This document shows, piece after piece, positions 13,276 through 45,365 of a stretch of DNA of 64,000 bases (the stretch's first letter is position 1; each line of letters starts with the position of its first letter). The notes under the pieces are model-generated. The model made no database searches and was not told the origin of the DNA. It saw only the letters and a list, made by a program, of their open reading frames with translations. The position numbers and the translations under genes are program-made. Source of the stretch: Malacoraja senta (taxonomy: Eukaryota); the NCBI GenBank assembly GCA_038087875.1, contig JAXLNO010003607.1, forward strand, positions 1-64,000. Direction: 5' to 3'.

Positions 13276-13446
<171 letters not shown>

Positions 13447-24339: not shown

Positions 24340-24475
24340 GGTCTCCGCCAATCGGATGGACTGTCCACCCCATGGACCAACGCCGTGGCCGGAACGAGGT
24401 CCAATGGTCAGCGAGGGGGGCGGGACATGGCGGTGTCTATAAAAGGCGCCGCTGTCCAGGCAGCGTCCGCAGTGG
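24340..24475 (+). promoter_or_regulatory. CpG-rich Pol II promoter of histone-gene type
   Basis: CCAAT 24348-24352, CCAAC 24377-24381, CCAAT 24401-24405, GC box GGGGCGGG 24417-24424, TATAAAA 24438-24444, Inr-like GCAGT with A at 24471. Confidence 0.7.
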
Positions 24476-24630
24476 CCGGAGAAGAACCTCGACGCGCGCC
24501 CCCACCAGGGATCCTTCAAGACACAATCCATCGCTCTGGTCATCCCACTGGTCAGCGAGGCTTCACTGGCCGGACCAGGTCTGCGTTCCGGACACGACCA
24601 ACGGTCAAGGCCAAAGACATCGCCCCTCAC
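24472..24630 (+). pseudogene. Histone H3 pseudogene with a large internal deletion
   Basis: Frameshifted pieces FKTQSIAL..SEASLAG, DQVC and RPTVKAKDI match H3 FQSSAVMAL..SEAYLVG, DTNLC and RVTIMPKDI. Confidence 0.6.
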
Positions 24631-24785
24631 CCCCAATTTAATAAAATATCCTCTCAGGGGTCACTCCTTCCTTCCCACCCGCCCTGTCCACGCACCGACG
24701 GGTCGAGTCCCCTTGAGGAGCGAGCGGTGAGTATGAAGGGGGGTGAGGGCGGGGAGTCTCTTTCCTGTGTCATTCTGCTCCATTG

Positions 24786-24975
24786 ATGGTGTTCGCGGTT
24801 ACACTCACCGGCGCTAAGTCCCCGCAAGTCCAGCTACGCACAAACATCTGCAGGTCATGTTGGCTCCGAGTAGATCCAGCGACCGGCCTTGAAGACGATG
24901 GCGTGGGAGACCGCGACCGAGATGTGCTTCCAGACCGAGATCTTGTCGGAGATCGGTGAGGTTCAGTCTCTTCGG
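24786..24975 (+). pseudogene. Histone H2B-like fragment running into an H3-like fragment
   Basis: KS/RKSSYA, NICR...RVDPATGL and KTM match H2B RSRKESYS, YVYK..QVHPDTGI and KAM. Then WETA-TEMCFQT matches H3 REIA..TDLRFQS. Confidence 0.65.
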
Positions 24976-25084
24976 TAAGAAGAAAAAGAGTTGGAGGAAC
25001 TCAGCGGGTCAGGCAGCATCTGTGGAGGGAATGGACAGACGACGTTTTGGATCGTGACCCTTCAAGACTCCATTCTAGTCTCCA

Positions 25085-25385
25085 TTTAACAGGTCAGTTT
25101 CCGACGACAGCAGGTACCAGAGGTTGATGGTCACCATGGGCTGGAATGACACATCGTTGAAGATCCCAAAGATCAATCTTGCTCCAAGTTCTCTGTGACC
25201 TCCCACACCTGGCGCTGGAGAAGCTGTTGAGGAACAACTTGGTGGGACTTCTTGTCGCCCTGGATCTCCTCCAGATGGTGTGAAGGGGAAAGCATGAAAC
25301 ATCTGCCGACTGATGTGGTTGCCAGCTGTTTGCGAGGAACTTTCCCTCCAAAGACTTGCAGGAAAATGCCACTGGGGCAGATGAT
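25085..25385 (-). pseudogene. Histone H3 pseudogene, left arm of inverted repeat 1
   Basis: Minus strand CKS-GGKVPRKQLATT matches RKSTGGKAPRKQLATK. Further pieces: LEEIQ, TKLFL, LQRQVWEV, SETDL. Confidence 0.8.
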
Positions 25386-25814
25386 GAGTCAGAGCCAGAC
25401 GAGTTTGACAAATTTCATAAACAATCTGTGCAACCCCAAGAGGGATTGGATAGCATGCAACAAAAGCCTTTCACTGTACCTCAGTACACATGACAATATA
25501 AATTAAAGTAAACTAAACTAAATGAATCTAAACTAAATTAATCTAAACTTAACTAAAACATAAAATAAACGTCAGGAACTCGAGCGCCGTTCGTGTAAAA
25601 CCATCGGATTTAAAGCCACATCGGTGGGGACCACACCGGAATTTCTCACTCTGTCCAACAAAGGCCCTAAAAGCGCCACTAGCCACCCCGCCTGCGCTCT
25701 CACCTGTATTTGGGAGTTCTTCGTCAACATTTCCCAATACAACAGGCAGCGATTTGTTGCACATGAGAATCCATGGCGTTTAAGAAATTTGTCAAACTCG
25801 TCTGGCTCTGACTC

Positions 25815-26112
25815 ATCATTTGCCCCAGTGACATTTTCCTGCAGGTCTTCGTAGGGAAAGTTCCTCATAAACAGCTGGCGACCACAACAGTCGGCAGATA
25901 TTTCATGTTTTCCCCTTCACACTGTCTGGAGGAGAACTGGGGCCACAAGAAATCCCACCAACTTGTTCCTCAACAGCTTCTCCAGTGCCAGATGTGGACG
26001 GTCATGCAGAATGTGGAGCAAGATTGGCCTTTGGGATCTTCAACCATGTGTTATTCCAGTCCATGGTGACCATCAACCTCTGCTGTCGTCGTTAACTGAC
26101 CTGGTGAATGGA
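25815..26112 (+). pseudogene. Histone H3 pseudogene, right arm of inverted repeat 1
   Basis: GKVPHKQLATT at about 25855-25890; reverse complement of 25085-25385. Confidence 0.8.
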
Positions 26113-26419
26113 GACTAGAATGGAGTCCTGAAGGGCCATGATTCAAAACATCATCTGTCCATTCCCTCCACATATGTTGCCTGACCCGCTGAGTTCCTCC
26201 AGCTGTTTTTCTTCTGACCGATGAGATTGAGCCTCGATGATCTGTTTCGGAGCCACAAAAAGTTGTTCCTCAACAGCTGCTCCACATGTGGAAGTTTGCT
26301 TCAAACTTGGAGAAAGATTGGCCTTCTTGCAAAGGCTTTTGATTCTGTCCCCAGACGTGGCTCTACCAGGTATTGGAGATGATTGGATGTCCACCACGTC
26401 TTCTAAACCTCACTCAGTC

Positions 26420-26497: not shown

Positions 26498-29400
26498 TGG
26501 GAGTATAAAGATAGAGTTAAAGGGAAAGCAAGTACCGGAAAAGTTACAAAAGACTCCCGACTTAATGGGAAGGAAAGTTTGAGAAGGGATAAGAGAGTAA
26601 GGTCAGAGCCAATAGTGACCGGTGTGAGAGGGGAGATGAATACCGAAGTTAAAGTGTTCTATATTAATGCACGAAATATAAGAAACAAAGTGGACGAGCT
26701 TGAGGCTCAGTTAGAAATTGGCAAGTATGATGTGGGAACAACAGAGACATGGCTGCAAAAGGAGCAGGGCTGGGAACTGAATATTCAAGGGTATAGGTCC
26801 TATCAAAAAGACAGGCAGAGGGGTTGGGGTAGCTCTGTTGCTGAGGAATGAAATTCAGTCCCTTGCGAGGGGTGACATAGAATCAGGAGATGTAGTCAGT
26901 ATGGATAGAACTGAAGAATTGTAAGGGTAAAAATACCCTAATGGGACTTATCTGCAGGCCCCCTTGGATATAGGGTGCAAATTGAATCAAGAGTTAAAAT
27001 TGCCATGTCATAAAGGTAATACTATGTTATGGGAGATTTCAACATGCAGGTAGACTGGGAAAATCAGGTTGGTACTGGACCCCAAGAAAGGGAGTTTGTG
27101 GAGTGCCTCCGTGATGGATTCTTAGAGCAGCTTGTATTGGAGCCTACCAGGGAGAAGGCAATTCTGGATTTAGTGTTGTATAATGAACCGGATTTGATAA
27201 GGGAACTCAAGGTAAAGGAGCCATTAGGAGGTAGTGACAATAATATGATCAGTTTTAATCTACAAGTTGAGAGGGAGAAGGGTAAATCGGAGGTGTCAGT
27301 ATTACAGTTGAATAAAGGGGACTATGGAGCCATGAGGGAGGAGCTGGCCAAAGTTGACTGGAAAGATACCCAAGCAGGGATGACAGTGGAACAACAATGG
27401 CAGGTATTTCTGCGAATAATATAGGTGCAGGAGCAGTTCATTCCAAATATGAAGAAAGATTCCAAAGGGAGTAAGGGGCGACCGTGGCTGACAAGGGAAG
27501 TCAGGAACATTATAAAAATAAAATAGGTATAACATAGCAAAGATGAGTGGGAAGCCATAGGATTGGTTAACGTTTAAAGAGCAACAGAAGATAACTAAAA
27601 AGGCAATACGGGGAGAAAAGATGAGGTATGAAAGTAAGCTAGCCAAGAATAGAAAGGATGATAGTAAAAGCTTCTTTAGGAATGTGAAGAGGAAGAAAAT
27701 AGTTAAGACCAAAGTTGGACCCTTGAAGACTGAAAAGGGTGAATTTATTATGGGCAACAAGGAAATGGCAGATGAGTTGAACAGGTACTTTGGATCCGTC
27801 TTCACTAAGGAAGACACAAACAATCTTCCTGAAGTACTAGTGGCCAGAGGATCTAGGGCGACTGTGGAACTGAAGGAAATCCACATTAGGCAGGAAATGG
27901 TGTTGGATAGACTGATGGGAATGAAGGCTGATAAATCCCCAGGCCTGATGGTCTGTATCCCAGGGTACTTAAGGAAGTGGCTCTAGAAATTGTGGATGCA
28001 TCGGTGATAATTTTCCAATGTTCTATAGATTCAGGATCAGCTCCTGTGGATTGGAGGGTAGCTAATGTTATCCCAATTTTTAAGAAAGACGGGAGAAAGA
28101 AAACGGAATTATAGACCAGTTAGCCTGACATCGGTGGTGGGGAAGATGCTGGAGTCAATTATAAAAAGATGAAATAGCGGCACATTTGGATAGCAGTACA
28201 GGGCCTGTCCCACTTTGCGATTTTTTTTGGCGACTGCGAGCGTCAATGACTGACGCCCGTAAAACCGTCAAGTTGTACAACATACACACTGACGTATGCT
28301 GTCCTGTGGGTGATGCCCGGTTAGGGTTAGGGACCACAGATGGGCTATAAAATATTCTTCCTTCAATGCATGATTTTAAACATTAATATATTAAAATTAA
28401 TGCAATATAATCAATTGTGCAAATGAAAAGATGCCTGAGTCGTTCAGTTTTATTTACAGATGTATTGGTCCGCTTACAGAGCCAATCACCTTCTCTAACT
28501 ATTCATAGGGATGGATTCAGTGAGTGTAGACTGAACTCCCCTCTCCATTCCACCCCCATCTTCCCCCTCCCGCTCTCTCCCTCCTTGTCTACTACCCCCC
28601 CTACCCTTCTCCCCTCTCCCCCCTTCTTTCCTTCCCCCCTCTTCCTCCCTTCTCCCCGCTCCACTCTCTCCCCTTCTTCCCTCCCCCCCTCTTCCTCCCT
28701 TCTCCCCACTCCACTCTCTCCCCCTTCTCCCCTCACATCCCCATCTCCCTCCCTTCTCCCATTCTCCAACCCCCCTCCCCCCCAGGTTCCCCGATGCCCC
28801 CCATTTGTGGACCCAGCCTGCGACCAGCGAATACCCGCATACTATCCCACACATGCTAGGGACAATTTATACAAACCGTAACCCTAGCCATAACTCTTAA
28901 CTCTAACTCTAACCATAACCCTAACCCCAGCCCTAACGCTAACCCTAACTCTAGGTTAATAGGCTTGGTATACATATAAATTGTCCCAAGCATGTGTGGG
29001 ATAGTATGCGGGGGATCGCTGGTCGGTGCGGACTTGATGGTCCGAAAGGCACTGTATCTCTGAACTAAATGTGATACAGGGGCCCCAGGGATTGGACTCA
29101 AACCCCCAATGTTCTGCCTGCTCATGGGAACTAAACTGTTGACCACGAGTTGTCCCAGAGGCAGATCTCTCTTCCAATGGTCTCTCCAAACCTCCAGAGG
29201 CAGTGGGCTTTTCAACTGGGTACAGGCAATGTTGTCAATGTACCAGTGCCACCCACCTGCTCCCGCCACTGGGTCTAAATACCCACCACCCATTTTGAAG
29301 CAAGGTGAGGGGGCGGGGAGGTGGGGGGTTGTTACCAAAGTCTGCATTTATCCCATAGTCAATGTCACTAAAACAGATGATGTGGCCTTTGCTGGGGGGG

Positions 29401-30757
29401 GGGGGGGGCGGTTGGAGAATGGGAGAAGGGAGGGAGAGGGGAGAAGGGTAGGGGGGTGGTTAGTGAAGAAGGAGGGATGGTGCAGGAGGGGGGAGAGGAT
29501 AGTTCAGTCTTCACTCACTGAATCCATCCTTGTGAAAAGTTAGAGATGGTGATTGGATCTGGAAGCCGACCAATACATCTGTAAATAAAACTGAACGACT
29601 CAGGCATCTTTTCATTTGCACAATTGATTTCATTGTATCAATTTTAATATATTAATATTTAAAACCCATGCATTGATGGAAGAATATTATACAGCCCATC
29701 TGTGGTCCCTAACCCTAACCAGCGTCACCCGCAGGACAGCAAACGTCAGCGTGTGACAGGGCGCACGATGTGATGAGACACCCAGAGACATTCCAAAATC
29801 CAGGGGCGACAGTGAGACACCGCGTCACTACATGCATCACACCAAGTCACGACCCAACCACGAAGCGACAACTTCTTTTCAGGCTGTCGCCCAAGTGGGA
29901 CTGGCCCTAAACAGGATCGGTCCGAGTACGGCATGGATTTACAAAGGGGAAATCATGCTTAACTAATCTTCGGGAATTGTTGAGGATGTAACTAAGAAAA
30001 TGGACAAGGGAGAGCCAGTGGATGTAGTGTACCTGGACTTTCACAAAGAATTCAATAAGGTCCCACATAGGAGATTAGTGGGCAAAATTAGGGCACATGG
30101 TTTTGGGGTAGAGTGCTGACATGGATACAAAATTGGTTGGCGGGCAGGAAACAAGGAGTAGGGATTAACGGGTCCCTTTCAGAATGGCAGGCAGTGACTA
30201 GTGGGGTACCGCAAGGCTTGGTGCTGGGACCGCAGCTATTTACAATATATTTATTAATGATTTAGGTGAAGGGATTACGTAACATTAGCAAATTTGCAGA
30301 TGACACAAAGCTGGGTGGCAGTGTGAACTGTGAGGAGGATACTATGAGACTGCAGGGTGACTTGGATAGGGGTGAATGGGCAGATGCATGGCAGATGCAG
30401 TTTAATGTGGATAAATGTGAGGTTATCCACTTTGGTAGCATAAACAGGAAGGCAGATTATTATCTGATTGGTGTCAGGTTGGGAAAAGGGGAAGTACAAC
30501 GGGATCTGGGGGTTCTTGTTCATCAGTCAATGAAACTAAGCGTGCAGGTACAGCCGGCAGTGAAGAAAGCGAATGGCATGTTGGCCTTTATAACAAGAGG
30601 AATCGAGTATAAGGAGCAAAGAGGTCCTTCTGCAGTTGTACAGAGCCCTAGTGTGACCACATCTGGAGTATTGTGTGCAGATTTGATCTCCAAATTGGAG
30701 GAAGGACATTCTTGCTATTGTGGGAGTGCAGCATAGGTTCACAAGGTTAATTCCCGG
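26498..30757 (+). mobile_element. Decayed CR1 LINE ORF2 (endonuclease through RT), interrupted at 28200-29908
   Basis: [31 protein letters not shown], with multiple stops and frameshifts. Confidence 0.9.
28200..29908. mobile_element. PIF/Harbinger-like non-autonomous element with long internal inverted repeats
   Basis: TIRs AGGGCCTGTCCCACTT and AAGTGGGACTGGCCCT (15/16 match). Flanks TAC and AAA fit a decayed TAA target in CR1 GATAGCAG-TAA-CAGGATC. Confidence 0.75.
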
Positions 30758-32050: not shown

Positions 32051-32404
32051 AAGGAAGGTTGTGTCCCAGCTCCCATGCTTTGTCTTCACGACTGACACAG
32101 AAGGAGCGTATCTTCACACTAGAAGCGACAGGAACCTCTTCATTCTAGCAACGCTTAAAGCCAAGACCAAGGTAAGAACTGTGCTTATAAATGTCCAATG
32201 GTTCTTTATTAGACATATTTACCGAGCTAAAGTGAAATTCATTTCTGTATAAACTTAAATACATGTATCACCATACATAATCACTTTGACAAAACTTATA
32301 TAAGCATCTCGGATACGGTACAAGTGTGTAACAGTAGTAGGTTGAGATAGTAGACAGAGAGGCCAGGTTTGGTGCCATTTCTCAAGTCTCAGTTTGTAAG
32401 TGCA

Positions 32405-33140
32405 GGGTTCTTGTGTTGTTGTGTTGGCTGGGTGTGTGTGGGGGGGAGGGGGAGCGGGTGGGGGGGAGGGGGAGCGGAAGGGGGGAGGGAGTGCAGTGAG
32501 CATTGTTGAGCTGGAGAGGGGGAGGGAGGATGTGGGAGGGGGAGAAGGGGGTGCGGGGGTTGTGTAGGGGAGGGGGTTGTGTAGGGGAGGGGTGTGGGGG
32601 AGGGAGGTGTGTGTTGGCCAGATGTGTGTAGAGAGGGGGAGGGAGGGGGGCAGTGAGTGTTGTGGAGCTGGAGAGGGGTTGTGGTGGGTGAGGGTGAGGT
32701 GTGTGTGGGGGAGGGGGTGCAGTGGGAAAGAGGAGGGGGAGTGGGGGAGTGGGAGGGGGTGTGGGGGAGAGAGGATGTGGGAGGGGGAGAAGGGGGTGTG
32801 GGCAAGCGGTGTGTGTTGGGTGGTGGGTGGGTGGTGTGTGGGCGGGGGATAGGTGTGTGTGTTGGGGGGGAGGAGGGGTGTGTGGGCGGGTGTGTGTGGA
32901 GGGGATGGAGGGGGGCAGTGAGTGTTGTGGAGCCGGAGGGGGATTGTGGGTGAGGGTGAGGTGTGTGGGAGGGGGAGAAGGGGGTGTGGGCAAGGGGTGT
33001 GTGTGGACAGGGGAGGGGGTGCAGGGGGAGGGGGTGTGTGTGGGGGGTGGGCGGGAAGGGTGTTGTGTGGGTGGGCAGTGTGTTGGGGGAGGGGGTGCAG
33101 GGGGAGGGAGGGGTGTGTGTGGGGGAGGGGGAGGGGTGTA
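32405..33140. repeat. G/T-rich degenerate satellite
   Basis: Almost only G, T and A on the + strand (gggggagggg, gtgtgtgg), with internal near-duplicated blocks. Confidence 0.9.
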
Positions 33141-33269
33141 TTTCTTGCTGTAGATTAACAAGCTTGTAACTGCAACAACACAAAAAATCATTAATTTACA
33201 TTTCAGTAAATTGATACTCACGATACTACTGTAAACACGTCTAATGCAACCAAAGACTCAGTCCATAGT

Positions 33270-34500
33270 TCTCAGTTCATAGATGTGGTTTGTGTCGGGC
33301 AGTGTTCAAGAGCCTGATGATTGCTGGGATCAAGCTGTTCCTGAACCTGGAGGTCACGTTTTTTGGGCTTCTGAACAAAATAATGGGAGCTTAGTGCAAT
33401 AACACACAGATAACTAATAAAATAAAAATACAGGAAATTAATAATTGAATGCTAGTGTAAAAAATATCTGTCGGGCAGCAAAAGACGCAGTCCATAATAT
33501 CTCATCGTTGTGGTTCATGTTGTGCAGCGTTCGAGAGGCTTGTAATTGCTGGGAAGAAGCTGCTCTTAAACATGGAGGTCAAGTTCTCTGCTTCTGTGGG
33601 GTTTTCTGTGGTAGGGTGGTGTGGGTCTTTGATATTAGCTGCCTTCTGCAGGTAGCATCTCCTGCAGAGCCCTTTGATGGTGAAGAGATCATCACCTGTG
33701 ACGGACTGAGCCGTTTCTGCGTAACACACGCGTAACACCAACATCGTCACACTGTACAAGAACAAGGGAATGCACCAACTACTGTTCTATTTAATTATTT
33801 AATTGTCATATGTACAGGCAACAGAACCGTTAAATTATTTCTTGCTGTAGATTAACAAACCTGTAATTGCAACAACACAAAAATGCATTAATCAAAATGT
33901 CAGTAAATTAATCGTCTTGATACCAGTGTAAATATTGTCTGTAAAGCAACTTAAGCCTCAGTCTGTAGTTCTTCATTGTTCATAGTTGTGGTTAGTGTTG
34001 GGCAATGCTTACGAGCCTGATGGTTGCTGGGAAGAAGCTGCTCCTGAACCAGGAGGTTATGTTTTTTAAGGTACAGAACCTTGTTGCAAATGGTAGGACT
34101 GAAATATCGAGAGTGTGGTCAGGATGGTGTGGGTCTTTGACATTAGCTACCTTTTGGATGCAGCATCTCCTGTAGATCGCTTTGATGGTGGGGAGATCAT
34201 TACCTGTGATGCACTGAGCAGTTTCTACCACTCTGTATTCTTCTTCATTCCTGGGAGTTTGAATTGCTGAACCAGGCTGCAGTGCAACCAGTCAGTGTGC
34301 TCTCTCCCATACAACTGTCCAAGTTCAACAGAGTATTCATCAACATGCCGAATCTCCTCAATCTTCTGAACAAGTAGAGGTGATGATGAGTCTTGTATGT
34401 GATTGCATTGATGTGCTGGACCCAGGACAGATCTTCAGAGACATGGACAACCAGGAACTTGCAACATAACATTCTCCACCACTGCCCCATGAATGAAGAC
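33270..34500 (-). mobile_element. Rex1/Babar-like LINE remnants; duplicated at about 37110-37980
   Basis: KFLVVHVSEDLSW..HINAI..K.H..LY.FRRLRRFG, ESTLTGC..AWF and RSSFFPATIRL. Confidence 0.7.
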
Positions 34501-34560
34501 AAGTTTGTGGATCATCGGTTTTCCCCTCCTGAGGTGATCGACCTCTGCCATGTTTCCTGT

Positions 34561-34750
34561 GATTGACCAGATGACAATATCTGATGAGATGGCCATGGAC
34601 CAGGGCTGGCACGCAGAAGCTTTATCACACCTGACCCTGCTGTGTTCCTGAGGAAGATCTGGTGTCACTGGGAATATGGAGCTGATCCTCTATAAACTGC
34701 CCTCAATGGAAGACCATGATGAAGGTGCATCTATAGAGCTCGGCTGTCAG
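34561..34750 (+). pseudogene. Histone H3 fragment (module B); copies at 36127, 38037, 39600 and 41630
   Basis: GTQK.HHT*P, VFLRKIWCH, ELILYKLP and *SSAV match GVKKPHRYRP, VALREIRRY, ELLIRKLP and QSSAV. R to W/C changes fit CpG decay. Confidence 0.75.
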
Positions 34751-34864
34751 CGAAGTTGGAACAGAAATCTGCTGGAGCAACTCAGTGGGTCAGGCAACAT
34801 CTGTGGAGGGAATGGACAGACGATGTTTGAATCCGGACCCACCAAGACTCCATTCTTGTCTCCA

Positions 34865-35520
34865 TTTACCAGGTTGGATTATGATGGCATGAAATGGCCA
34901 AGATTGATGATCACTGTGGACTGGAGTGACAGATGACTGAAGATCCTGAAGACCCAATCTTGCTCCACGGTCTGCGACCTTCCACACCTGGAACTGGAGA
35001 AGTTGTTGAGGAACAACTTGGTGGGATTTCTTGTGGCCCTGGATCTACTCCAGATTGTTTGAAGGGACAAATGTGACAGATGTCTGAGTGCCAGCGATTG
35101 GCCGAGGACGGGCCCTCGGTGGGTGCCGGAGGTCGGTCGAGTATGTGGCGCCGAGAGAACATGGCATCTGGGGAGGGAATGGGCAGATGACGTTTGGATC
35201 AGGATCCTTCAAGACTCCATTCTTGTCTCCATTTACCAGGTCACTTTCTGACGACATGAAATGGGCAAGTTTAATGATCACAGTGGACTTGAATGACTGA
35301 ACCTTGAAGATCCCAAAGGCCAATCTTACTCAACGTTCTACGCGACCTTCCACACCTGGCATTGTTGAGGAACAACTTGGTGGGACATCTTGTCGCCCCG
35401 GATATCCTCCAGACAGTGTGAAGGGGAACATCTGCTGACTGATGAGGTCGTCAGCTGTTTGCGAGGAACTTTCTCGCCGAAGACTTGCATGAAAATGCCA
35501 CTGGGGCAGATGATGAGTCA
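34865..35520 (-). pseudogene. Two antisense H3 pseudogene fragments (34865-35055, 35230-35520); duplicated at +3476
   Basis: Same module as 25085-25385; minus strand EKVPRKQLTT near 35480-35450. Confidence 0.75.
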
Positions 35521-35609
35521 GAGCTGGACGAGTTAGACATATTTCTTAAACGGCGTGGATTCTCCCGTGCAACCTCAACAGGGATTGGATAGCACGCAAC
35601 AGAAGCGAT

Positions 35610-35732
35610 GTCAGGAACCCGAGTGCCGTTCGTGGAAAACCATCGGATATGAAGCCACATCGGTGAGGACCGCACCGGAATTTCTCACTCCGTCCAACAA
35701 AGGCCCTTTTAAGAGCCACTAGAAAAAGAGCT
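35610..35732 (+). promoter_or_regulatory. H3 C-terminal remnant followed by a histone mRNA 3' stem-loop and U7 downstream element
   Basis: NPSAVRGK/PSDM resembles NLCAIHAK/PKDI. Then AAA-GGCCCT-TTTA-AGAGCC-ACT (35702-35717, one C-A mismatch) and AAAAAGAGCT (35723-35732). Confidence 0.85.
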
Positions 35733-35869
35733 ACAACCTCTTCCCCACCTGCGCTCTCATCTGCATTTGAGATTTCATCGTCAACATTTCCCAGTACAAC
35801 TGGCAGCGATCAGTTGCACGGAGGAATCCACGCCTTTTAAGAAATTTGTCAAACACATCTGGCTCTGAC

Positions 35870-36120
35870 TCATCATCTGCCCCAGTAGCATTTTCCTGCA
35901 CGTCTTCAGAGGGAAAGGTCCTCACAAATAGCTGGCGACCACATCAGACGGCAGAAGTTTAATGTTTTCCACTTCATACCTTCTGGAGGAGATCCAGGCC
36001 CACAAGAGGTCCCACCAAGTTGTTCCTCAAAAGCTTCTCAAGCGCCAGGTGTGGAAGGTCATGGAGAACTTGGAGTAAGATGCCATTCAAGTCCACGGTG
36101 ATCATCGACCTCCGCCACGT
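35870..36120 (+). pseudogene. Histone H3 pseudogene, right arm of inverted repeat 2; duplicated at 39346-39596
   Basis: GKGPHK*LATT, LEEIQ, TKLFLK, KRQVWKV and FKSTVIIDL. Confidence 0.75.
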
Positions 36121-36399
36121 TCCTGAGATTGACCAGATGACAATATCTGATGAGATGGCCATGGACCAGGGCTGGCACGCAGAAGCTTTATCACACCTGA
36201 CCCTGCTGTGTTCCTGAGGAAGATCTGGTGTCACTGGGAATATGGAGCTGATCCTCTATAAACTGCCCTCAATGGAAGACCATGATGAAGGTGCATCTAT
36301 AGAGCTCGGCTGTCAGCGAAGTTGGAACAGAAATCTGCTGGAGCAACTCAGTGGGTCAGGCAACATCTGTGGAGGGAATGGACAGACGATGTTTGCAAT

Positions 36400-36540
36400 C
36401 GGCACGGAGCCGGTCAAGACCAGACTCGGCCGGCGGTGACCGCAAACAAGGAAGAGCCCGGCAGCCAAAGTGTCTGCGGAGAACGAGGGTCAAAGACGGG
36501 CCCGCGGTGGGTGCCGGAGGTCGGTCGAGGACGTGCTGCC
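36400..36540 (+). pseudogene. Possible histone H2A fragment; copies at 39745-39890 and 42330-42435
   Basis: VKTRLGR and QGRAR...LRR....PAVGAGG resemble AKTRSSR and VGRVH..LRK....ERVGAGA. CpG-rich; weak match by eye. Confidence 0.4.
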
Positions 36541-36689
36541 GAGAAGGAAGAGGGACCATCAGGGACCACATTGGTCACTCATCACCCCAACAGAAGAAGG
36601 ACTTCAGGGGCTGATGGACAGACTGTCTCAAGCTCGCAACAAAGACCGACTGACAATCATCAGAGAGACGGTGGTGTCCCTCAACACAT

Positions 36690-37109
36690 GTGTAACACCA
36701 ACATCGTCACACTGCACAAGGACAAGGGAGATCACAGCAAGTGCACCAACTACAAGGGACATCTCACTTCTGAGTGTTACAGGAAAGGCCTTTGCCAGAG
36801 TGATCCTACAAAGACTGCACAGACTCGCTGACCTGAGGCACAATGCGGTTTCCATGGAGATAGATCCACAATGGACATGATCTTCTCCCTGCGTCAAATC
36901 CAAGAAAAATGTCAAGAGCAGCAAACCCCATTGTTCATCGCCTTTGTGGATGTTACGAAAGCTTTTGATTCTGTCAGCAGACATGGCCTCTACCACCTAC
37001 TGGAGAAGATTAGATGTCCACCACGTCTTCTAAACCTCTCTTGGTCCTTCCATGAGAACATGCATCTACAGTAGTGGAAATTGATGAAGCTACATCGGAT
37101 AGTTTCCAC
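36690..37109 (+). mobile_element. RTE-clade LINE RT remnant; longer copy at 40035-40985 and a piece at 42505-42800
   Basis: IVTLHKDKGD....NY, ISLLSVTGKAFARV, DMIFSLRQIQEKC.EQ..PLFIAFVDVTKAFD and ADDAAL. Confidence 0.85.
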
Positions 37110-39177
37110 ATTAGCTGCCTTCTGCAGGTAGCATCTCCTGCAGAGCCCTTTGATGGTGAAGAGATCATCACCTGTGACGGACTGAGCCGTTTCTGCGTAA
37201 CACACGCGTAACACCAACATCGTCACACTGTACAAGAACAAGGGAATGCACCAACTACTGTTCTATTTAATTATTTAATTGTCATATGTACAGGCAACAG
37301 AACCGTTAAATTATTTCTTGCTGTAGATTAACAAACCTGTAATTGCAACAACACAAAAATGCATTAATCAAAATGTCAGTAAATTAATCGTCTTGATACC
37401 AGTGTAAATATTGTCTGTAAAGCAACTTAAGCCTCAGTCTGTAGTTCTTCATGGTTCATAGTTGTGGTTAGTGTTGGGCAATGCTTACGAGCCTGATGGT
37501 TGCTGGGAAGAAGCTGCTCCTGAACCAGGAGGTTATGTTTTTTAAGGTACAGAACCTTGTTGCAAATGGTAGGACTGAAATATCGAGAGTGTGGTCAGGA
37601 TGGTGTGGGTCTTTGACATTAGCTACCTTTTGGATGCAGCATCTCCTGTAGATCGCTTTGATGGTGGGGAGATCATTACCTGTGATGCACTGAGCAGTTT
37701 CTACCACTCTGTATTCTTCTTCATTCCTGGGAGTTTGAATTGCTGAACCAGGCTGCAGTGCAACCAGTCAGTGTGCTCTCTCCCATACAACTGTCCAAGT
37801 TCAACAGAGTATTCATCAACATGCCGAATCTCCTCAATCTTCTGAACAAGTAGAGGTGATGATGAGTCTTGTATGTGATTGCATTGATGTGCTGGACCCA
37901 GGACAGATCTTCAGAGACATGGACAACCAGGAACTTGCAACATAACATTCTCCACCACTGCCCCATGAATGAAGACAAGTTTGTGGATCATCGGTTTTCC
38001 CCTCCTGAGGTGATCGACCTCTGCCATGTTTCCTGTGATTGACCAGATGACAATATCTGATGAGATGGCCATGGACCAGGGCTGGCACGCAGAAGCTTTA
38101 TCACACCTGACCCTGCTGTGTTCCTGAGGAAGATCTGGTGTCACTGGGAATATGGAGCTGATCCTCTATAAACTGCCCTCAATGGAAGACCATGATGAAG
38201 GTGCATCTATAGAGCTCGGCTGTCAGCGAAGTTGGAACAGAAATCTGCTGGAGCAACTCAGTGGGTCAGGCAACATCTGTGGAGGGAATGGACAGACGAT
38301 GTTTGAATCCGGACCCACCAAGACTCCATTCTTGTCTCCATTTACCAGGTTGGATTATGATGGCAGGAAATGGCCAAGATTGATGATCACTGTGGACTGG
38401 AGTGACAGATGACTGAAGATCCTGAAGACCCAATCTTGCTCCACGGTCTGCGACCTTCCACACCTGGAACTGGAGAAGTTGTTGATGAACAACTTGGTGG
38501 GATTTCTTGTGGCCCTGGATCTACTCCAGATTGTTTGAAGGGACAAATGTGACAGATGTCTGAGTGCCAGCGATTGGCCGAGGACGGGCCCTCGGTGGGT
38601 GCCGGAGGTCGGTCGAGTATGTGGCGCCGAGAGAACATGGCATCTGGGGAGGGAATGGGCAGATGACGTTTGGATCAGGATCCTTCAAGACTCCATTCTT
38701 GTCTCCATTTACCAGGTCACTTTCTGACGACATGAAATGGGCAAGTTTAATGATCACAGTGGACTTGAATGACTGAACCTTGAAGATCCCAAAGGCCAAT
38801 CTTACTCAACGTTCTACGCGACCTTCCACACCTGGCATTGTTGAGGAACAACTTGGTGGGACATCTTGTCGCCCCGGATATCCTCCAGACAGTGTGAAGG
38901 GGAACATCTGCTGACTGATGAGGTCGTCAGCTGTTTGCGAGGAACTTTCTCGCCGAAGACTTGCATGAAAATGCCACTGGGGCAGATGATGAGTCAGAGC
39001 TGGACGAGTTAGACATATTTCTTAAAGGGCGTGGATTCTCCCGTGCAACCTCAACAGGGATTGGATAGCACGCAACAGAAGCTATGTCAGGAACCCGAGT
39101 GCCGTTCGTGGAAAACCATCGGATATGAAGCCACATCGGTGAGGACCGCACCGGAATTTCTCACTCCGTCCAACAAA

Positions 39178-39208
39178 GGCCCTTTTAAGAGCCACTAGAA
39201 AAAGAGCT
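39178..39208 (+). promoter_or_regulatory. Second copy of the histone stem-loop + U7 element
   Basis: Identical to 35702-35732 at offset 3476. Confidence 0.85.
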
Positions 39209-41934
39209 ACAACCTCTTCCCCACCTGCGCTCTCATCTGCATTTGAGATTTCATCGTCAACATTTCCCAGTACAACTGGCAGCGATCAGTTGCACGGAGG
39301 AATCCACGCCTTTTAAGAAATTTGTCAAACACATCTGGCTCTGACTCATCATCTGCCCCAGTAGCAGTTTCCTGCAAGTCTTCAGAGGGAAAGGTCCTCA
39401 CAAATAGCTGGCGACCACATCAGACAGCAGAAGTTTAATGTTTTCCACTTCATACCTTCTGGGGGAGATCCAGGCCCACAAGAGGTCCCACCAAGTTGTT
39501 CCTCAAAAGCTTCTCAAGCGCCAGGTGTGGAAGGTCATGGAGAACTTGGAGTAAGATGCCATTCAAGTCCACGGTGATCATCGACCTCCGCCACGTTCCT
39601 GAGATTGACCAGAGGACAAGATCTGAAGGGACGGCCACGGACCAGGGGTGGCACGCAGAAGCTTCATCACACCTGACCCTGCTGTGTTGCTGAGGGAACC
39701 TCCCGGTGAGCGCCGCACAGCCGTGCTGGAGCCGACCCAGCAATCGGCACGGAGCCGGTCAAGACCAGACTCGGCCGGCGGTGACCGCAAACAAGGAAGA
39801 GCCCGGCAGCCAAAGTGTCTGTGGAGAACGAGGGTCAAAGACGGGCCCGCGTTGGGTGCCGGAGGTCGGTCGAGGACGTGCTGCCGAGAAGGAAGAGGGA
39901 CCATCGGGACCACATTGGTCACTCATCACCCCAACAGAAGAAGGACTTCAGGGGCTGATGGACAGACTGTCTCAAGCTCGCAACAAAGACCGACTGACAA
40001 TCATCAGAGAGACGGTGGTGTCCCTCAACACATGTGTAACACCAACATCGTCACACTGCACAAGGACAAGGGAGATCACAGCAAGTGCACCAACTACAAG
40101 GGACATCTCACTTCTGAGTGTTACAGGAAAGGCCTTTGCCAGAGTGATCCTACAAAGACTGCACAGACTCGCTGACCTGAGGCACAATGCGGTTTCCATG
40201 GAGATAGATCCACAATGGACATGATCTTCTCCCTGCGTCAAATCCAAGAAAAATGTCAAGAGCAGCAAACCCCATTGTTCATCGCCTTTGTGGATGTTAC
40301 GAAAGCTTTTGATTCTGTCAGCAGACATGGCCTCTACCACCTACTGGAGAAGATTAGATGTCCACCACGTCTTCTAAACCTCTCTTGGTCCTTCCATGAG
40401 AACATGCATCTACAGTGGAAATTGATGAAGCTACATCGGATAGTTTCCACATGAGAAGTGGAGTGAAGCAAGGCTGTGACCCAACTCCCATGGTGTTTGG
40501 CATCTTCCTATCTGCCCTTTGCCTTCCCAACATACACGGGAGACGTGTATCTTCAAACCAGAAGTGACGGGATGCTCTTCAATGTGGCAATGTTGAAAGC
40601 CAAGACGAAGGTGAGAACTGTGCTTATAAGGGAACTCCAGCCCGCTGATGATGCTGCACTCAGTTCCTCAACAGAAGAAGGACTTCAGGGGCTGATGGAC
40701 AGACTGTCTCATGCTTGCACCAAAGACCGACTGGCAATCAGCATTAAGATGACTGTTGTCATGGATCAGGGCACTCCACTCCCCTCTGAAATCACCCTAA
40801 ACACCACTACGCTGGAAAATGTCTTAAATTCACCAACCTAGGATCTACGGTGACTGACAGCCACTCTCTGGATGAGGAAACCAATTCACGTACAGTAACC
40901 CACCTTCGAGAGACTAAGCAAGTGGACATGGAAGAACAGGAAACTCACAATGAAGACCAAGGTAACTGTCTACAACGGAGACAGTTTTTATTTTTTTATT
41001 CTGCTTATATGTTTTGTAATCTGCTTATCTGCAAGGCATCCTTGAGAGTCTTTGAAAGGTGCCCATAAGTGTAATGATAAATAAAAAATAAAAAAATAAA
41101 AATCAATGAAGTCAAGTTTGTGGATCTGCGGCTTTCTCCTGAGGTCAACAAATAGCTCTGTGGTTCTGCAGACATTGAGAACAAAACGTCTGCACTGGCA
41201 GCATTTCCTCTCAATCTCTCTCCTGTACTCTGACTCGTCATTACCCATTATTTGTCCAACAACGGTGGTATCGTCGGTGAAATTTAAAGATGGCTTTGGA
41301 ATGGTCTGGCTGTGCAGTCCTGGTCATAGAGCAGGGGAGTGAACACACAGCCTTGAGCTGGTCATGTGTTGGTTATAGAGGAGGAGGTGTTGCCCGTTTG
41401 TGCTGATTGTGGTCTGCTGATGAGGAAATTGAAGATCCTTTTGTACAGGATTGAGCAGAGACAAGGTTAAGGAGATGTGTGAGGACATCCAGGACAGATT
41501 TTCAGAGACATGGACACGCAGGAACTTGCAACATAATGTTCTCCACCACTGCCCCATGAATGAAAACAAGTTTGTGGATCATCGACTTTCCCCTCCTGAG
41601 GTCATCGACCTCTGCTGTGTTTCTTGTGATTGACCAGAGGACAATATCTGAAGAGACGGCCATGGACCAGGGCTGGCACGCAGAAGCATCATCACACCTG
41701 ACCCTGCTGTGTTGCTGAGGAAGATCTGGTGTCACTGGGAATGTGGAGCTGATCCTCTGTAAACTGCCCTCAGTGGAAGACCATGATAGAGATGTGTTTT
41801 TAGAGCTCGGCTGTCAGCGAAGGAGGAGCAGAAAACTGCTGGAGGAACTCAGCGGGTCAGGCAGCATCTGCGGAGGAAATGGACATATGACATTTGGATC
41901 GAGACCCTTCAAGAATCCATTCTTGTCTCCATTT

Positions 41935-42125
41935 ACCAGGTCAGTTTCTGATGACAGGAAATGGCCAAGATTGACCATCATCATGGACTTGCATGTCAGA
42001 TGCTTGAAGATACTGAAGACCCAATCTTGCTCCACGTGCTCTGCGAACTTCCACACCTGGCGCTGGAGAAGCTGTTGAGGAACAACTTGGTGGGATTTCT
42101 TAGGGTGCTGGATCTCCTCCAGATT
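41935..42125 (-). pseudogene. Antisense H3 pseudogene fragment
   Basis: ORF 41814-42182(-) contains LEEIQHPKKS...LQRQVWKFAE...SETDLVN. Confidence 0.7.
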
Positions 42126-43434
42126 GATTGAAGGTGGGTGCCAGAGGTCGGTCGAAGACACGACTCCGAGAGGACTTTTCATCTGTGGAGGGATTGGACA
42201 GACAACGGTTTGGATCAGGAACCTTCAAGATTCCATTCTTGTCTCCATTTACCAGGTCGGTTTCTGATGACAGGAAATGGCCAAGATTAATGATCACCGT
42301 GGACTTGAATGACAGAAAATTGAAGCCGCTCAAGACCGGACTCGGCCCGCAATGGCCACGAACAAGGACAAACCCGGCAGCCGAAGTGACCGCCGAGACA
42401 AGTGTCCAGTACGGGCCCTCGGTAGGTGCCCGAGGCCAGACTGCTCATGGAATGACGCGCCGCTGAGAAGGAAGAGGAACCATCGGGACCATATTGGTCA
42501 CTCATCACCCCAACAGAAGAAGGACTTCAGGGGTTGATGGACAAACTGTCTCCTGCTTGCAATGATTACCGATTGGCAATCAGTATTAAGACGACTGTTG
42601 TCATGGACCAAGACACTCCACTCCTCTCTAAAATCATCCTAAACACCAGTCAGGTGGAAACTGTCATCAAATTCACCTACCTAGGATCAACGTTGACTGA
42701 CTGCCACTCTGTGGACGAGGAAATCAATTCACCTACAGCAAACCACCTTCCTATACAGTAACCACATTCTGGAGTATATCCAAGCAGACATGGAAGAACA
42801 GGAGTAACAATGTCCTATTGGCAGCATTCCCTCAGATTATCAATCTCTCTCCTGTACTCTGTCTGACTCGTCATTACCCATTATTTGTCCAACAATGGTG
42901 GTACCGTCGATGAAATTTAAAGACGGCATTGGAATGGTCTGGCTGTGCAGTCCTGGTCATAGAGCAGGGGACTGAACACACAGCCTTGAGCTGGTCCTGT
43001 GTTGGTTATAGAGGAGGGGGTGTTGCCAGTTTGTGCTGAGCTGGAGGCCTTGCTCGAGACTGACATTGAGCCCCACCGCAGGGTCGTGGACTTACCATCG
43101 GAGCCTGCGATCCCTTGCCTGTGATCGACACTCCAACTGTGGGTTTCAACATCAAGGAGCTCGCAATCTCAGGTAGAAACTGATGTCAGGAAGGTCCAAA
43201 GTCGCAGGAGGTTCGACCAGCCCCAACCCGGGGTCTGATCGCCTGACGCGGGGGAGCTGAGATCCCCCCGATGCAGGAGCTTGATCGCCCCAACGCGGAG
43301 GGCCAGACCGCTGGCTACGGGAGCCAAGATCGCCCCGTCAACTGAAGTCTCGAGGACCCCGATTGCAGGAGAACAAAGAAGGGAAGAGATTGAACTTTTT
43401 CTAGGGTGATCATCAGCCTCTGATTGACCTGAGA

Positions 43435-43750
43435 TTGACCATAGGACAAGATCTGAAGAGATGGCCATGTACCAAGGGAAACATGTAGAAGCATCATCGC
43501 TCCTGACTCATCTGTGTTCCTGAGGACAATGTGGTGCTGCTAGGAATAGACTGAGCTGCTTCTCCGCTGAACTGCCTTCCAGTCCCTGGTATGGGACATC
43601 GCTCGGGACTTCAGGTAAGACCTTTACTTGGGTATCCTTCCTCTGCAATTCCCTACGAGATAGACCTTACAAACAGTTGTAGAACACTCACTGGCAGCAT
43701 ATTCATGGCTCCCGATCTCTCACTGTCTGAAGCAGCTCCTGTGCCACCAA
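43435..43750 (+). pseudogene. Most complete histone H3 pseudogene in the window
   Basis: 43511-43630 translates without gaps to SVFLRTMWCC*E*TELLLR*TAFQSLVWDIARDFR*DLYL versus H3 [40 protein letters not shown] (18/40 identical). Downstream *NTHWQHIHGSR resembles EDTNLCAIHAKR. Confidence 0.88.
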
Positions 43751-43809
43751 CAATGTAGACAGCTGTCGGTCTTCAAACTGCTCTGCCAGTGCCACTTGTC
43801 ATAAGTTCA

Positions 43810-45140
43810 TTAGTCATAGGACCAAAATTAGGCCATTCAGCCCATCAAGTCTACTCCACCATTCAACCATGGCTGATCTATCTTTCCCTCTCAACCCCAT
43901 TCTCCTGCCTTCACCCCATAACCCGATACCCGTACTAATAAAAAATCTGTCAATCTCTGCCTCAAAAATATCCATTGCCTTGGCCTCCATCTCCATCTGT
44001 GGCAAATAATTCCACAGTTTCACCACCCTCTGACTAAAGAAATTCCTTCTCATCTTTCTAAAGGTACATTGTTTTATTCTGAGGCTATGGCTTCTGGTCC
44101 AAGACTCTCCGACTGGTGGAAACATCCTCTCCACATCCACTTTCACTATTTGGTAAGTTTCAATGAGTACCCCCTCATCCTTCTAAACTCCAGCAAGTAC
44201 AGGCTCAGTGCCGCCAAATGCCATCATATCTTAACCCAATCATTCCTGAGATCATTCTCGTAAATGTTCTCTGGACCAACACACCCTTCCTGAGATTTGG
44301 TGCCCAAAACTGCTCACAATATTCCAAATGTGGTCTGACCAGTGCCTTATGAACTCCTCAGCATTGCATCCCTGTTTTTGTATTCTAGCCCTCTCAAAAT
44401 AACTGCCGGCTTTGCATTTGCCTTCCTTACCACCGATTCAACTTGCAAATTAACTTTTTAGGAATCCTGCAGCAGCACTCCCGAGTCCCTTTGCACCTCC
44501 AAATCCTGAATTCTCTTCCCATTTAGAAAATAGTCTACGCCTTTATTCCAACTACCAAAATGCATGACTACACATTTTGCTATGCTGTATTCCAACTGCT
44601 AATTCTCAGCCCATTCTCTCAACCTTCTGTTACCTTCTGTTGTTTTTTTAAAAGCTTCCCAATTCTCCAGCTACCCCACTAACCTTTGCAATGTTATATG
44701 CCTTCTCTTTAATTTTATTCCTCCTTGTCTCCTTTCTAAAGATACATCCGTTAATTCTGAAGCTGTGCCCTCTTGTTCTAGACTCTCTCCCACTAGTGGA
44801 AACATCCTCTCACATCTACCCTTTCCAGCCTTTCATTATTCAATGAGGTTCCCCCCCTCATCCTTCTAAACTCCAGCGAGTACAGGTCCAGAGCCGCCAA
44901 ACATTCATCATATATGAATCCAATCATTCTCATAAACCTCCTCTGCACCCTCTCTAATACCAGCATATCCCTCTTCAGATATGGGTCCCAAAACTGCTCA
45001 CAATATTCCAAATGTGGTCTGATCAGTGCCTTATTAAGCCTCAGCATTACATCTCTTTTTTATATATTTTAGAGTTACTCCAGCTTTTTGAGTTTATATT
45101 CCAGTTGTCTTGAAATGAATGCTAACATTGCATTTGCCTT
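43810..45140 (-). mobile_element. Two decayed CR1 fragments
   Basis: FFSQRVVKLWN and LIRPHLEYC.QFW on the minus strand. Confidence 0.85.
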
Positions 45141-45179
45141 GTTATTTGTATGTGCAGGATTGCTCAGTATTTGGAGAAA

Positions 45180-45365
45180 CAATGGGCTTTGGGATCTTCA
45201 GCATTGCCCTGCCCTTCAAGTCCATGGCTGATGATCTACCTCCAACATTTTGCTGCACAGTGCCAGAGGGAAAAATCGAGTAGAAGCCCATTGAAGCCTC
45301 GTCACTACGGACTGCAACCTGTTCCAAAGAGAGAGATCAGATGTCACCAGAAACCCACTGTAACC
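45180..45365 (+). pseudogene. Distal H3 fragment
   Basis: KPRHYGLQPVPKREIRCHQKPT matches [22 protein letters not shown]. It is preceded by the same gggatcttca...ttcaagtcca module as the other copies. Confidence 0.7.

What the first reader, a model, noticed from the sequence alone, without database searches (positions are those of the whole stretch)
24340..45365. Hidden array of about 20 shattered histone-gene fragments (mainly H3) in both orientations
Seen in the sequence: when frameshifts are allowed, the non-TE repeated modules here translate to histone motifs. Examples are GGKVPRKQLAT (~25345-25315, minus), TELLLR..FQSLVWDIARDF (43550-43612), REIRCHQKPT (~45330-45360), *SSAV (~34734), H2B-like RKSSY/VDPATG (~24823-24890) and the histone stem-loop/U7 element. 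No copy is intact. Copies are riddled with small deletions, are fused to one another, and are interleaved with RTE, Rex1 and Penelope-type pieces that were copied along with them. Known: replication-dependent histone genes evolve by birth and death, so pseudogenes are expected. Unusual: fragments this diverged have kept being re-amplified locally, in sense and antisense, behind an intact-looking promoter. Inference: this may be a histone-derived non-coding locus (hairpin RNA or piRNA-cluster-like) rather than passive debris.
Basis: partly seen in the sequence, partly recalled or inferred. Interest (0 to 1): 0.85.

Follow-up and report, generated by a model that had tools for sequence, protein, structure and literature searches.

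The report
Decayed, locally duplicated histone H3 pseudogenes
Downstream of a CALY-like gene lie about 14 badly decayed pieces of histone H3 genes, copied again and again on the spot together with neighbouring transposon scraps; this looks like an ordinary gene graveyard, and nothing found so far shows that it works as an RNA-producing locus.

Summary
The observation largely holds. The interval 24.9-45.6 kb carries about 14 histone H3-derived fragments in both orientations. Ten are strong copies of one ~320-bp H3 relic and four are weaker pieces. There are also three remnants of the histone 3' stem-loop plus U7-binding element. H3 identity has four supports: DNA matches to unrelated real H3 genes (E 5e-8), tblastn (E 0.001-0.003), my frameshift-aware alignment (scores 61-74 against a null maximum of 41-49), and a sub-threshold Rfam stem-loop hit. 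No H4, H2A or H2B is detectable, and the "H2B-like" item is not supported. Six module copies share the same junction with an antisense SINE piece. They therefore descend from one relic that was already dead and were multiplied by segmental duplication in tiers of about 75%, 82-86% and 99% identity. Two other fragments (43.5 kb and 45.3 kb) are much closer to real H3, so several H3 genes died here at different times. Read depth shows the H3 part is low-copy, not a dispersed transposon. The functional reading (hairpin or piRNA-like locus) gets no support. The CpG-island promoter has no polyA RNA-seq reads. Inverted arms are no more alike than unpaired copies. Divergence from a sister species matches the flanks. 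The relics are too decayed to target real H3. Small RNAs could not be tested. The same stretches were already noted by first-stage readers of this window.

The parts
24200..25000 (+). Strongest CpG island of the window. It carries histone-type promoter boxes: CCAAT at 24348 and 24401, a GC box at 24415-24426 and TATAAAAG at 24439-24446. No recognisable gene follows it.
   Evidence: GC 0.62, CpG o/e 0.90, 62 CpGs. Sequence read. H3, H4, H2A and H2B scores downstream are at the null level. No polyA reads.
24778..24887 (+). Possible H3 N-terminal scrap (ATG ... TGAKSPQVQLRT ... PATG).
   Evidence: Frameshift-aware score 42 against a null maximum of 41, and 47-50 against 49 with relaxed settings.
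24985..25110 (+). High-copy SINE fragment fused to the 3' side of H3 relic A. The same junction is present in copies B, C, D, F and G.
   Evidence: Word depth about 3.7e5 against a baseline of 20-37. Shared junction in the alignment.
25114..25437 (-). H3 relic A: TATA-like box, decayed start codon and residues 13-90 with in-frame deletions.
   Evidence: nhmmer E 3e-112. H3 score 63-71. tblastn E 0.003. The top PDB hits are almost all H3, each individually weak.
25440..25570 (+). Tail of a high-copy SINE/LINE with a (TAAAC)n run, inserted into the A/B loop.
   Evidence: Depth about 7.7e4. Tandem repeat.
25655..25690 (+). Degraded copy of the histone stem-loop, in the A/B loop.
   Evidence: Aligns to 35692-35741 but has lost the loop and the HDE.
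25764..26083 (+). H3 relic B, the inverted partner of A. Arms 24950-25422 and 25778-26243 are 86.9% identical over 473 bp, with a 356-nt loop.
   Evidence: nhmmer E 7e-110. Self-blast. In the predicted fold 430 of 473 arm bases pair.
26252..26326 (+). Short extra H3 relic piece (H).
   Evidence: nhmmer E 4e-11.
33634..40455 (.). Recent tandem duplication of a unit of about 3.5 kb (33634-37110 and 37110-40455) that carries relics C, D and E plus LINE pieces.
   Evidence: 99.0-99.3% identity. Not checked against reads.
34892..35122 (-). H3 relic C, of the subfamily that lacks the N-terminus. Its duplicate C' is at 38368-38598.
   Evidence: nhmmer E 1e-67 and 2e-66.
35259..35566 (-). H3 relic D. 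Its duplicate D' is at 38735-39042.
   Evidence: nhmmer E 2e-100. H3 score 49-59.
35697..35741 (+). Histone 3' stem-loop with one stem mismatch, followed by an HDE-like AAAAAGAGCT, in the D/E loop. Its duplicate is at 39173-39217.
   Evidence: Rfam RF00032, 21.2 bits, E 0.096, below the gathering score of 34.
35820..36119 (+). H3 relic E, the inverted partner of D. Its duplicate E' is at 39296-39595.
   Evidence: nhmmer E 8e-98. D/E arms 79-82% identical.
41959..42162 (-). H3 relic F, an older copy of C (85% identical).
   Evidence: nhmmer E 1e-57. Identity matrix.
42275..42399 (-). H3 relic G, a strongly diverged partial copy.
   Evidence: nhmmer E 8e-24.
43550..43728 (+). Separate H3 pseudogene fragment covering residues 59-128. 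It is much closer to real H3 than the module copies.
   Evidence: blastn with real H3 CDS, E 5e-8. tblastn E 0.001. Score 61-70.
45151..45249 (+). Module-like H3 piece (Y45a).
   Evidence: nhmmer E 1.4e-10.
45294..45590 (+). Separate H3 pseudogene (Y45b). Residues 38-71 are recognisable. A deletion follows, and then a stem-loop/HDE remnant at 45554-45590.
   Evidence: Alignment. The stem-loop region is 81% identical to 35700-35731.

Best explanation
This is the relic of a small histone H3 gene cluster that died long ago 3' of a CALY-like gene. One H3 gene was already badly decayed: only about 30% protein identity to H3 was left, it had in-frame deletions, and a SINE had landed in its 3' half. 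That relic, with its promoter remnant, was then copied repeatedly within about 20 kb by DNA-level segmental duplication, both tandem and inverted. Adjacent SINE and LINE scraps were carried along. This produced about 12 module copies in identity tiers of roughly 75%, 82-86% and 99%. The inverted events created two kinds of head-to-head pair, A/B and D/E. At least two further H3 genes (43.5 kb and 45.3 kb) died later and decayed where they stood. The DNA is most likely non-functional, and duplication by non-allelic recombination or template switching in a repeat-rich interval is enough to explain it. Shown: H3 identity, common descent from a composite relic, low copy number, the identity tiers, and presence in a related species. 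Inferred: the duplication mechanism, the lack of function, and the idea that the CpG island is the promoter of the last H3 gene to die or of an unannotated transcript.
For: H3 identity. Real H3 CDS from unrelated organisms matches 43549-43624 (E 5e-8, 1e-6, 1e-4) and modules A and F (E 0.014, 0.049). tblastn gives E 0.001-0.003. Frameshift-aware scores are 63, 61 and 49 against a null maximum of 41, and 71, 70 and 59 against 49 with relaxed settings. The module consensus scores 72-74. Stem-loop/HDE remnants occur at three independent sites. Common descent after death: six copies share the same H3/SINE junction and the same deletions. nhmmer finds ten strong copies and two partial ones, all between 24.9 and 45.3 kb and none elsewhere in the 64 kb. 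Low copy number: word depth over the H3 parts is 36-126 against a single-copy baseline of 20-37, while the SINE and LINE parts reach 1e4-1e5. Identity tiers: the pairwise matrix and the 99.3% tandem duplication. No sign of function: zero polyA reads on the promoter and on copy B. Arms are no more alike than unpaired copies. Divergence from organism D is 4-10% everywhere. CpG o/e in the relics is 0.22-0.59, like methylated neutral DNA. A protein language-model search does not recognise the translated relic as a protein.
Against: The CpG island at 24.2-25.0 kb keeps a CpG o/e of 0.90 and a textbook CCAAT/CCAAT/GC/TATA arrangement, which hints at a promoter that is unmethylated and still in use. 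The stem-loop plus HDE at 35697-35741 is much better preserved than the neighbouring coding relics. If transcribed, the A/B pair would fold into a long imperfect hairpin (430 of 473 arm bases paired, longest perfect run 36 bp). A few strand-specific polyA reads lie over copy A. Only one true RNA-seq run of unknown tissue was usable. Small RNAs and non-polyadenylated RNA were not examined. In organism D one module position is covered by 30 contigs at about 15 times baseline depth, so the copy number may be higher there or elsewhere in the genome.
Confidence: 0.8

Rival explanations
1. This is a functional histone-derived non-coding locus. Transcription from the CpG-island promoter, or read-through from elsewhere, crosses the head-to-head H3 relics. 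The RNA folds into long hairpins that are diced into endo-siRNAs, or the whole TE-rich interval acts as a piRNA cluster.
For: There are inverted pairs with arms of 250-470 bp. The predicted A/B hairpin pairs 430 of 473 arm bases. The A/B pair lies about 0.5 kb downstream of a CpG island with TATA and CCAAT boxes. Pseudogene inverted repeats that yield endo-siRNAs are a known phenomenon (PMC3616710, PMC2708354, PMC5398296). A few one-strand polyA reads lie over copy A.
Against: There are no polyA reads on the island, the expected first exon, the loop or copy B. The arms are only 82-86% identical and no more alike than unpaired copies. No extra conservation is seen against organism D. The relics are too diverged from H3 to target it. 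The two hairpins differ in arm length and content, so the architecture is not a conserved unit.
Confidence: 0.08
2. The H3 relic is cargo of a low-copy mobile element, such as a foldback or TIR DNA transposon or a LINE/SINE transduction. The copies would then be insertions rather than segmental duplications.
For: The relic is fused to a SINE piece. Two pairs look like long terminal inverted repeats. Unchecked first-stage notes report TIR elements carrying head-to-head histone H1 fragments elsewhere in this genome. Depth at one module position is about 15 times baseline in organism D.
Against: All copies lie within 21 kb and there are none in the other 43 kb. Depth over the H3 parts is near single-copy, against 1e4-1e5 for true repeats. 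Copies have different ends and share flanking LINE pieces as parts of larger duplicated blocks (34422-35309 = 41489-42325, and the 3.5-kb tandem unit). The arms of the two pairs differ in extent, so there are no defined termini. No target-site duplications were seen at 24950 or 26243.
Confidence: 0.08
3. The histone resemblance is chance similarity in transposon-rich DNA.
For: Pfam's Histone model, a PDB profile search and a protein-atlas search do not recognise the translated relics. Individual PDB hits have E values of only 0.4-1.3.
Against: There is an independent DNA-level match to real H3 genes in the correct codon register (E 5e-8). H3 12-22 is matched 10 of 11. The order TATA, start, N-tail, fold region is collinear. 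Stem-loop/HDE remnants sit in the right place after the 45.3-kb copy. Nearly all of the best 60 PDB hits are H3.
Confidence: 0.02

Closest known systems
Replication-dependent histone pseudogenes and 'orphons' (solitary or decayed copies derived from histone gene clusters; birth-and-death evolution of histone families). The orphon concept is cited from my own knowledge (Childs et al. 1981); only confirms that the term is in use.
   Same: They are intronless H3-derived sequences with promoter-box and 3' stem-loop/HDE remnants. There are several deaths of different age at one locus. The copies arose by DNA-level duplication, not retroposition, because promoter remnants were copied too.
   Different: Most copies descend from one relic that was already dead and SINE-disrupted, and that was re-duplicated at least three more times, in both orientations. 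No other histone class and no intact gene lies within 64 kb.
Pseudogene inverted-repeat hairpin loci that give endo-siRNAs (mouse oocyte, rice and human examples; PMC3616710, PMC2708354, PMC5398296)
   Same: It has head-to-head pseudogene copies with a short spacer that could fold into a long dsRNA hairpin.
   Different: No transcript across both arms was seen. The arms are only 82-86% identical. The relic is too diverged from the parent gene to act on it in trans. Small RNAs were not tested.
Segmental-duplication hotspots (nested tandem and inverted duplications in repeat-rich intergenic DNA)
   Same: It shows nested blocks of different age (about 75%, 82-86%, 99%), mosaic units that carry unrelated TE scraps, and both orientations.
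   Different: The scale is small (0.3-3.5 kb units within about 20 kb), and the seed sequence happens to be a histone gene.

Membership tests
Replication-dependent histone H3 gene or pseudogene | Sequence homology to the H3 coding region | tested here: met
   blastn with real H3 CDS gives E 5e-8 at 43549-43624 and E 0.014 at copy A. tblastn gives E 0.001-0.003. Frameshift-aware scores are 61-74 against a null of 41-49.
Replication-dependent histone H3 gene or pseudogene | 3' stem-loop followed by a purine-rich U7-binding element (HDE) | tested here: inconclusive
   RF00032 scores 21.2 bits, E 0.096, below the gathering score of 34, at 35697-35741 and 39173-39217. Degraded copies lie at 25655-25690 and 45554-45590. 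The fold alone is not better than shuffles.
Replication-dependent histone H3 gene or pseudogene | Intact open reading frame (functional gene) | tested here: not met
   Every copy has stops, frameshifts or deletions. Pfam's Histone model does not match.
Full histone cluster (H1/H2A/H2B/H3/H4 repeat) | Other core histone genes or relics alongside H3 | tested here: not met
   H4, H2A and H2B frameshift-aware scores do not exceed the reversed-sequence null anywhere in the window. H1 was not tested for lack of a reference sequence.
Pseudogene-derived hairpin / endo-siRNA locus | Inverted repeat able to form a long dsRNA | tested here: met
   A/B arms are 473 bp at 86.9% identity, and 430 of 473 bases pair. 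D/E arms are about 260 bp at 79-82%.
Pseudogene-derived hairpin / endo-siRNA locus | One transcript spanning both arms | tested here: inconclusive
   No reads lie on the promoter, loop or copy B in one polyA run of unknown tissue. Other 'RNA' runs look like DNA.
Pseudogene-derived hairpin / endo-siRNA locus | Small RNAs of 21-30 nt mapping to the arms | not testable with these tools
   The run index works on 31-letter words of contigs, so small-RNA libraries cannot be found or laid.
Pseudogene-derived hairpin / endo-siRNA locus | Enough identity to the parent gene to act on it in trans | tested here: not met
   The module consensus is only about 30% identical to H3 protein over residues 13-90. 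The species' own H3 genes were not available.
Transposon carrying captured gene fragments | Dispersed copies with defined termini and target-site duplications | tested here: not met
   Copies lie only at 24.9-45.3 kb. Depth is near single-copy. Copy ends vary and belong to larger duplicated blocks. The whole genome was not searched.

The most novel reading that the evidence does not exclude
In a cartilaginous fish, a CpG-island promoter of histone type drives germline transcription through head-to-head dead H3 copies. The transcript ends at a retained histone stem-loop/U7 site and yields hairpin-derived small RNAs. This would be a histone-derived hpRNA or piRNA-like locus kept alive by repeated local re-duplication.
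Probability: 0.06. Interest if true: 0.6.

Novelty: new member of a known kind. Interest (0 to 1): 0.22.

Why it matters
As it stands this is a tidy example of birth-and-death decay of histone genes combined with nested segmental duplication. It is useful for annotation: these stretches should be masked as H3 pseudogene plus SINE/LINE mosaic, not called as genes. It also marks where an ancestral H3 cluster once sat next to CALY in elasmobranchs. It would matter more only if germline small-RNA or total-RNA data showed that the hairpins are expressed and processed.

Tried and rejected
(1) PDB phmmer on the 105-aa ORF 25094-25411 (-) gave no H3 hit, so my eye-alignment of that frame was wrong.
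(2) PDB phmmer on the H3-frame piece of copy A returned almost only H3, but each hit had E 0.4-1.3.
(3) A profile of six translated copies against the PDB gave nothing.
(4) Pfam on ten relic and island ORFs gave no Histone hit.
(5) A protein-atlas search did not recognise the relic.
(6) Rfam at gathering thresholds found nothing in the window.
(7) H4, H2A and H2B references taken from giant-virus and protist contigs gave only null-level scores. An H2A pattern scan found no locus, so H2A was tested only with the H2B-H2A fusion protein of L020.
(8) I considered the sequence upstream of the 35697 stem-loop as an H3 C-terminus, as an H3 'KKPHRYRPG' piece, or as an H4 C-terminus. It is too short to decide.
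(9) I tested whether the island's downstream 500 bp encodes any core histone. It does not recognisably do so.
(10) The 'RNA?' runs X18, X19, X25 and X26 cover everything evenly and were flagged as probably DNA, so I did not count them as expression.
(11) A possible extra H3 scrap at 8003-8158 (-) scores 47-53, at the edge of the null, so I did not count it.

Full report
**What was checked first**

The window has no N runs. GGKVPRKQLAT is at 25317-25349 on the minus strand, with sister copies at 25854-25883 (+), 35422-35478 (-) and 38898-38954 (-). TELLLR*TAFQSLVWDIARDFR*DL is at 43550-43624 (+). KPRHY...REIRCHQKPT is at 45294-45359 (+). A motif scan for H4, H2A and H2B found only isolated chance hits.

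**Getting histone references without typing them**

Degenerate DNA patterns for conserved H3, H4 and H2B peptides were scanned against IMG/VR. This returned near-canonical H3 genes (L014, L003, L001, L007 and others), H4 genes (L002, L019) and an H2B-H2A fusion (L020). All were read out.

**Is it histone H3?**

- tblastn gives E 0.001-0.003 for H3 at 43550-43624 and at 25152-25349.
- I wrote a protein-versus-DNA Smith-Waterman that allows frameshifts. Its null is the reversed sequence. H3 scores 63 (copy A), 61 (43.5 kb) and 49 (copy D and its duplicate), against a null maximum of 41.
- With relaxed penalties the scores are 71, 70, 59, 53-56 and 50, against a null maximum of 49 over 212 segments.
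- Real H3 coding DNA from three unrelated organisms matches 43549-43624 at 72.7-77.3% over 66-77 nt. The E values are 5e-8, 1e-6 and 1e-4, in the correct codon register. The same queries touch copies A and F at E 0.014 and 0.049. This is the strongest single test.
- PDB phmmer with the H3-frame piece of copy A returns almost only H3 chains, each weak.
- Rfam finds the histone 3' stem-loop at 35697-35741 and 39173-39217 (21.2 bits, E 0.096, below the gathering score of 34), followed by an HDE-like AAAAAGAGCT.
- Degraded versions of that stem-loop lie at 25655-25690 and at 45554-45590. The latter sits at about the right distance downstream of the 45.3-kb H3 fragment.
- Pfam, a PDB profile search and the protein atlas do not recognise the relics. 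That fits deep decay.
- H4, H2A and H2B never exceed their nulls, so this is an H3-only assemblage. The 'H2B-like' item is at best a borderline H3 N-tail.

**Anatomy**

Self-comparison, a multiple alignment and an nhmmer profile of the H3 part define a module of about 320 bp. It reads: TATA-like box, decayed start codon, H3 residues 13-90 with two in-frame deletions, then a further deletion.

The ten strong module copies are:

| Copy | Coordinates | Strand |
|---|---|---|
| A | 25114-25437 | - |
| B | 25764-26083 | + |
| C | 34892-35122 | - |
| D | 35259-35566 | - |
| E | 35820-36119 | + |
| C' | 38368-38598 | - |
| D' | 38735-39042 | - |
| E' | 39296-39595 | + |
| F | 41959-42162 | - |
| G | 42275-42399 | - |

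- There are two short pieces as well: H (26252-26326, +) and Y45a (45151-45249, +).
- In A, B, C, D, F and G the H3 relic runs without a break into the same antisense SINE fragment. They therefore all descend from one composite ancestor that was already dead.
- The module consensus is only about 30% identical to H3 protein (score 72-74).
- Two other fragments are much closer to real H3: 43550-43728 (residues 59-128) and 45294-45590 (residues 38-71, a deletion, then a stem-loop remnant). Under a neutral clock they must have died later, so several H3 genes once lived here.
- In all there are about 14 fragments.

**History**

- Pairwise identities give two subfamilies. {A, B, D, E} are 82-86% identical to one another. 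{C, F} are 85% identical. Between the two subfamilies identity is 73-77%.
- On top of this sits a 3.5-kb tandem duplication at 99.0-99.3% (33634-37110 and 37110-40455).
- Larger blocks carrying LINE pieces were copied as well, for example 34422-35309 = 41489-42325 at 82%.
- Two head-to-head pairs exist. A/B has 473-bp arms at 86.9% and a 356-nt loop. D/E has arms of about 260 bp at 79-82%. In both, the stem-loop remnant lies in the loop.
- The arms of a pair are no more alike than unpaired copies (A/E 84%, B/D 83%). The two pairs also differ in arm extent, so neither is a conserved unit or a transposon with fixed ends.

**Copy number and species**

- Laying contigs of DNA runs gives word depths of 36-126 over the H3 parts, against 20-37 for unique flanks. 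The SINE and LINE parts reach 1e4-4e5. The H3 module is therefore low-copy.
- Organism A matches the window exactly in unique pieces.
- Organism D differs by 2-10% and has copy A, the loop and the start of copy B. The A/B pair therefore predates that split.
- Divergence in the relics (4-6%), the loop (8-10%) and the promoter core (8 differences and 2 indels in 113 bp) is like that of the flanks.
- One module position has 30 contigs at about 15 times baseline in organism D. This is unexplained.

**Promoter and expression**

- 24200-25000 is the strongest CpG island in the window (GC 0.62, o/e 0.90). The relics have o/e 0.22-0.59.
- The island carries CCAAT at 24348 and 24401, a GC box at 24415-24426 and TATAAAAG at 24439-24446. 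Nothing recognisable follows it.
- In the one true polyA RNA-seq run (X30; 1.1 Gb read) there are zero reads from 24000 to 24923 and zero on copy B. There is only a depth of 1-3.6, all on one strand, over 25092-25427. The heavy coverage is confined to the SINE pieces.
- The other 'RNA' runs behave like DNA.
- If transcribed, A/B would fold into a long imperfect hairpin (430 of 473 arm bases paired, longest perfect run 36 bp). That is true of any inverted duplication.

**Context**

CALY/NSG-like coding exons lie on the plus strand at about 7.5, 13.4 and 17.6 kb.

**Verdict**

The best explanation is a decayed H3 cluster whose oldest relic was repeatedly re-duplicated on the spot. The hairpin or piRNA idea is physically possible and of a known kind. 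It has no support from expression, conservation, arm homogeneity or targeting potential, and it needs germline small-RNA data to settle. The preserved CpG island and the well-kept stem-loop/HDE are the only features that neutral decay does not explain well.

Noticed in passing
window 7530-7650, 13300-13400, 17590-17720 (+): These are coding exons of a CALY/NSG-family gene: MVKAGYSFSDKP...DGFDNIPLITPLDVNQLEQPLPEKV, a transmembrane segment plus CPEGFVFK, and HKHCSPAALEMYYSQQE. The H3 array lies downstream of it.
   Followed up: partly
window 9649-11973 (+): A 775-aa uninterrupted endonuclease plus reverse-transcriptase LINE ORF sits inside the CALY-like gene, continued by a 243-aa piece at 11927-12655. 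It looks like a young element.
   Followed up: no
window 28284-29754: An inverted repeat (28284-28627 against 29754-29424, 84%) surrounds an interstitial telomere-like (AACCCT)13 run at 28874-28953. Rfam MIR7533 hits both strands at 28811-29038 far below threshold (54 bits against 230).
   Followed up: no
window 24200-25000: A CpG island (o/e 0.90) has two CCAAT boxes, a GC box and TATAAAAG, but no recognisable gene and no polyA reads. A GT donor-like site (CGG|GTGAGT) lies at 24728 and an AATAAA at 24641.
   Followed up: partly
window 33634-40455: A tandem duplication of about 3.5 kb is 99.0-99.3% identical between copies, with a 131-bp length difference between them. It could be very recent or an assembly artefact.
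   Followed up: no
window 34537-34833 vs 36104-36400: A 297-bp stretch (LINE piece plus the start of relic C) is repeated at 98.3% inside one duplication unit. This suggests a recent small duplication or gene conversion.
   Followed up: no
window 32400-33200: This is a G-rich low-complexity block (GGGGGAGGGG-type units, several overlapping periods) that creates long spurious proline-rich ORFs on the minus strand.
   Followed up: no
window 8003-8158 (-): A borderline H3-like alignment (score 47-53, at the edge of the null) lies near the first CALY-like exon. It is probably chance.
   Followed up: partly
window 25202, runs X1 and X5: Every contig covering this position has T where the window has C: 9 contigs in organism A and 30 contigs at about 15 times baseline depth in organism D. 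This suggests more module copies than the window shows, at least in organism D.
   Followed up: no
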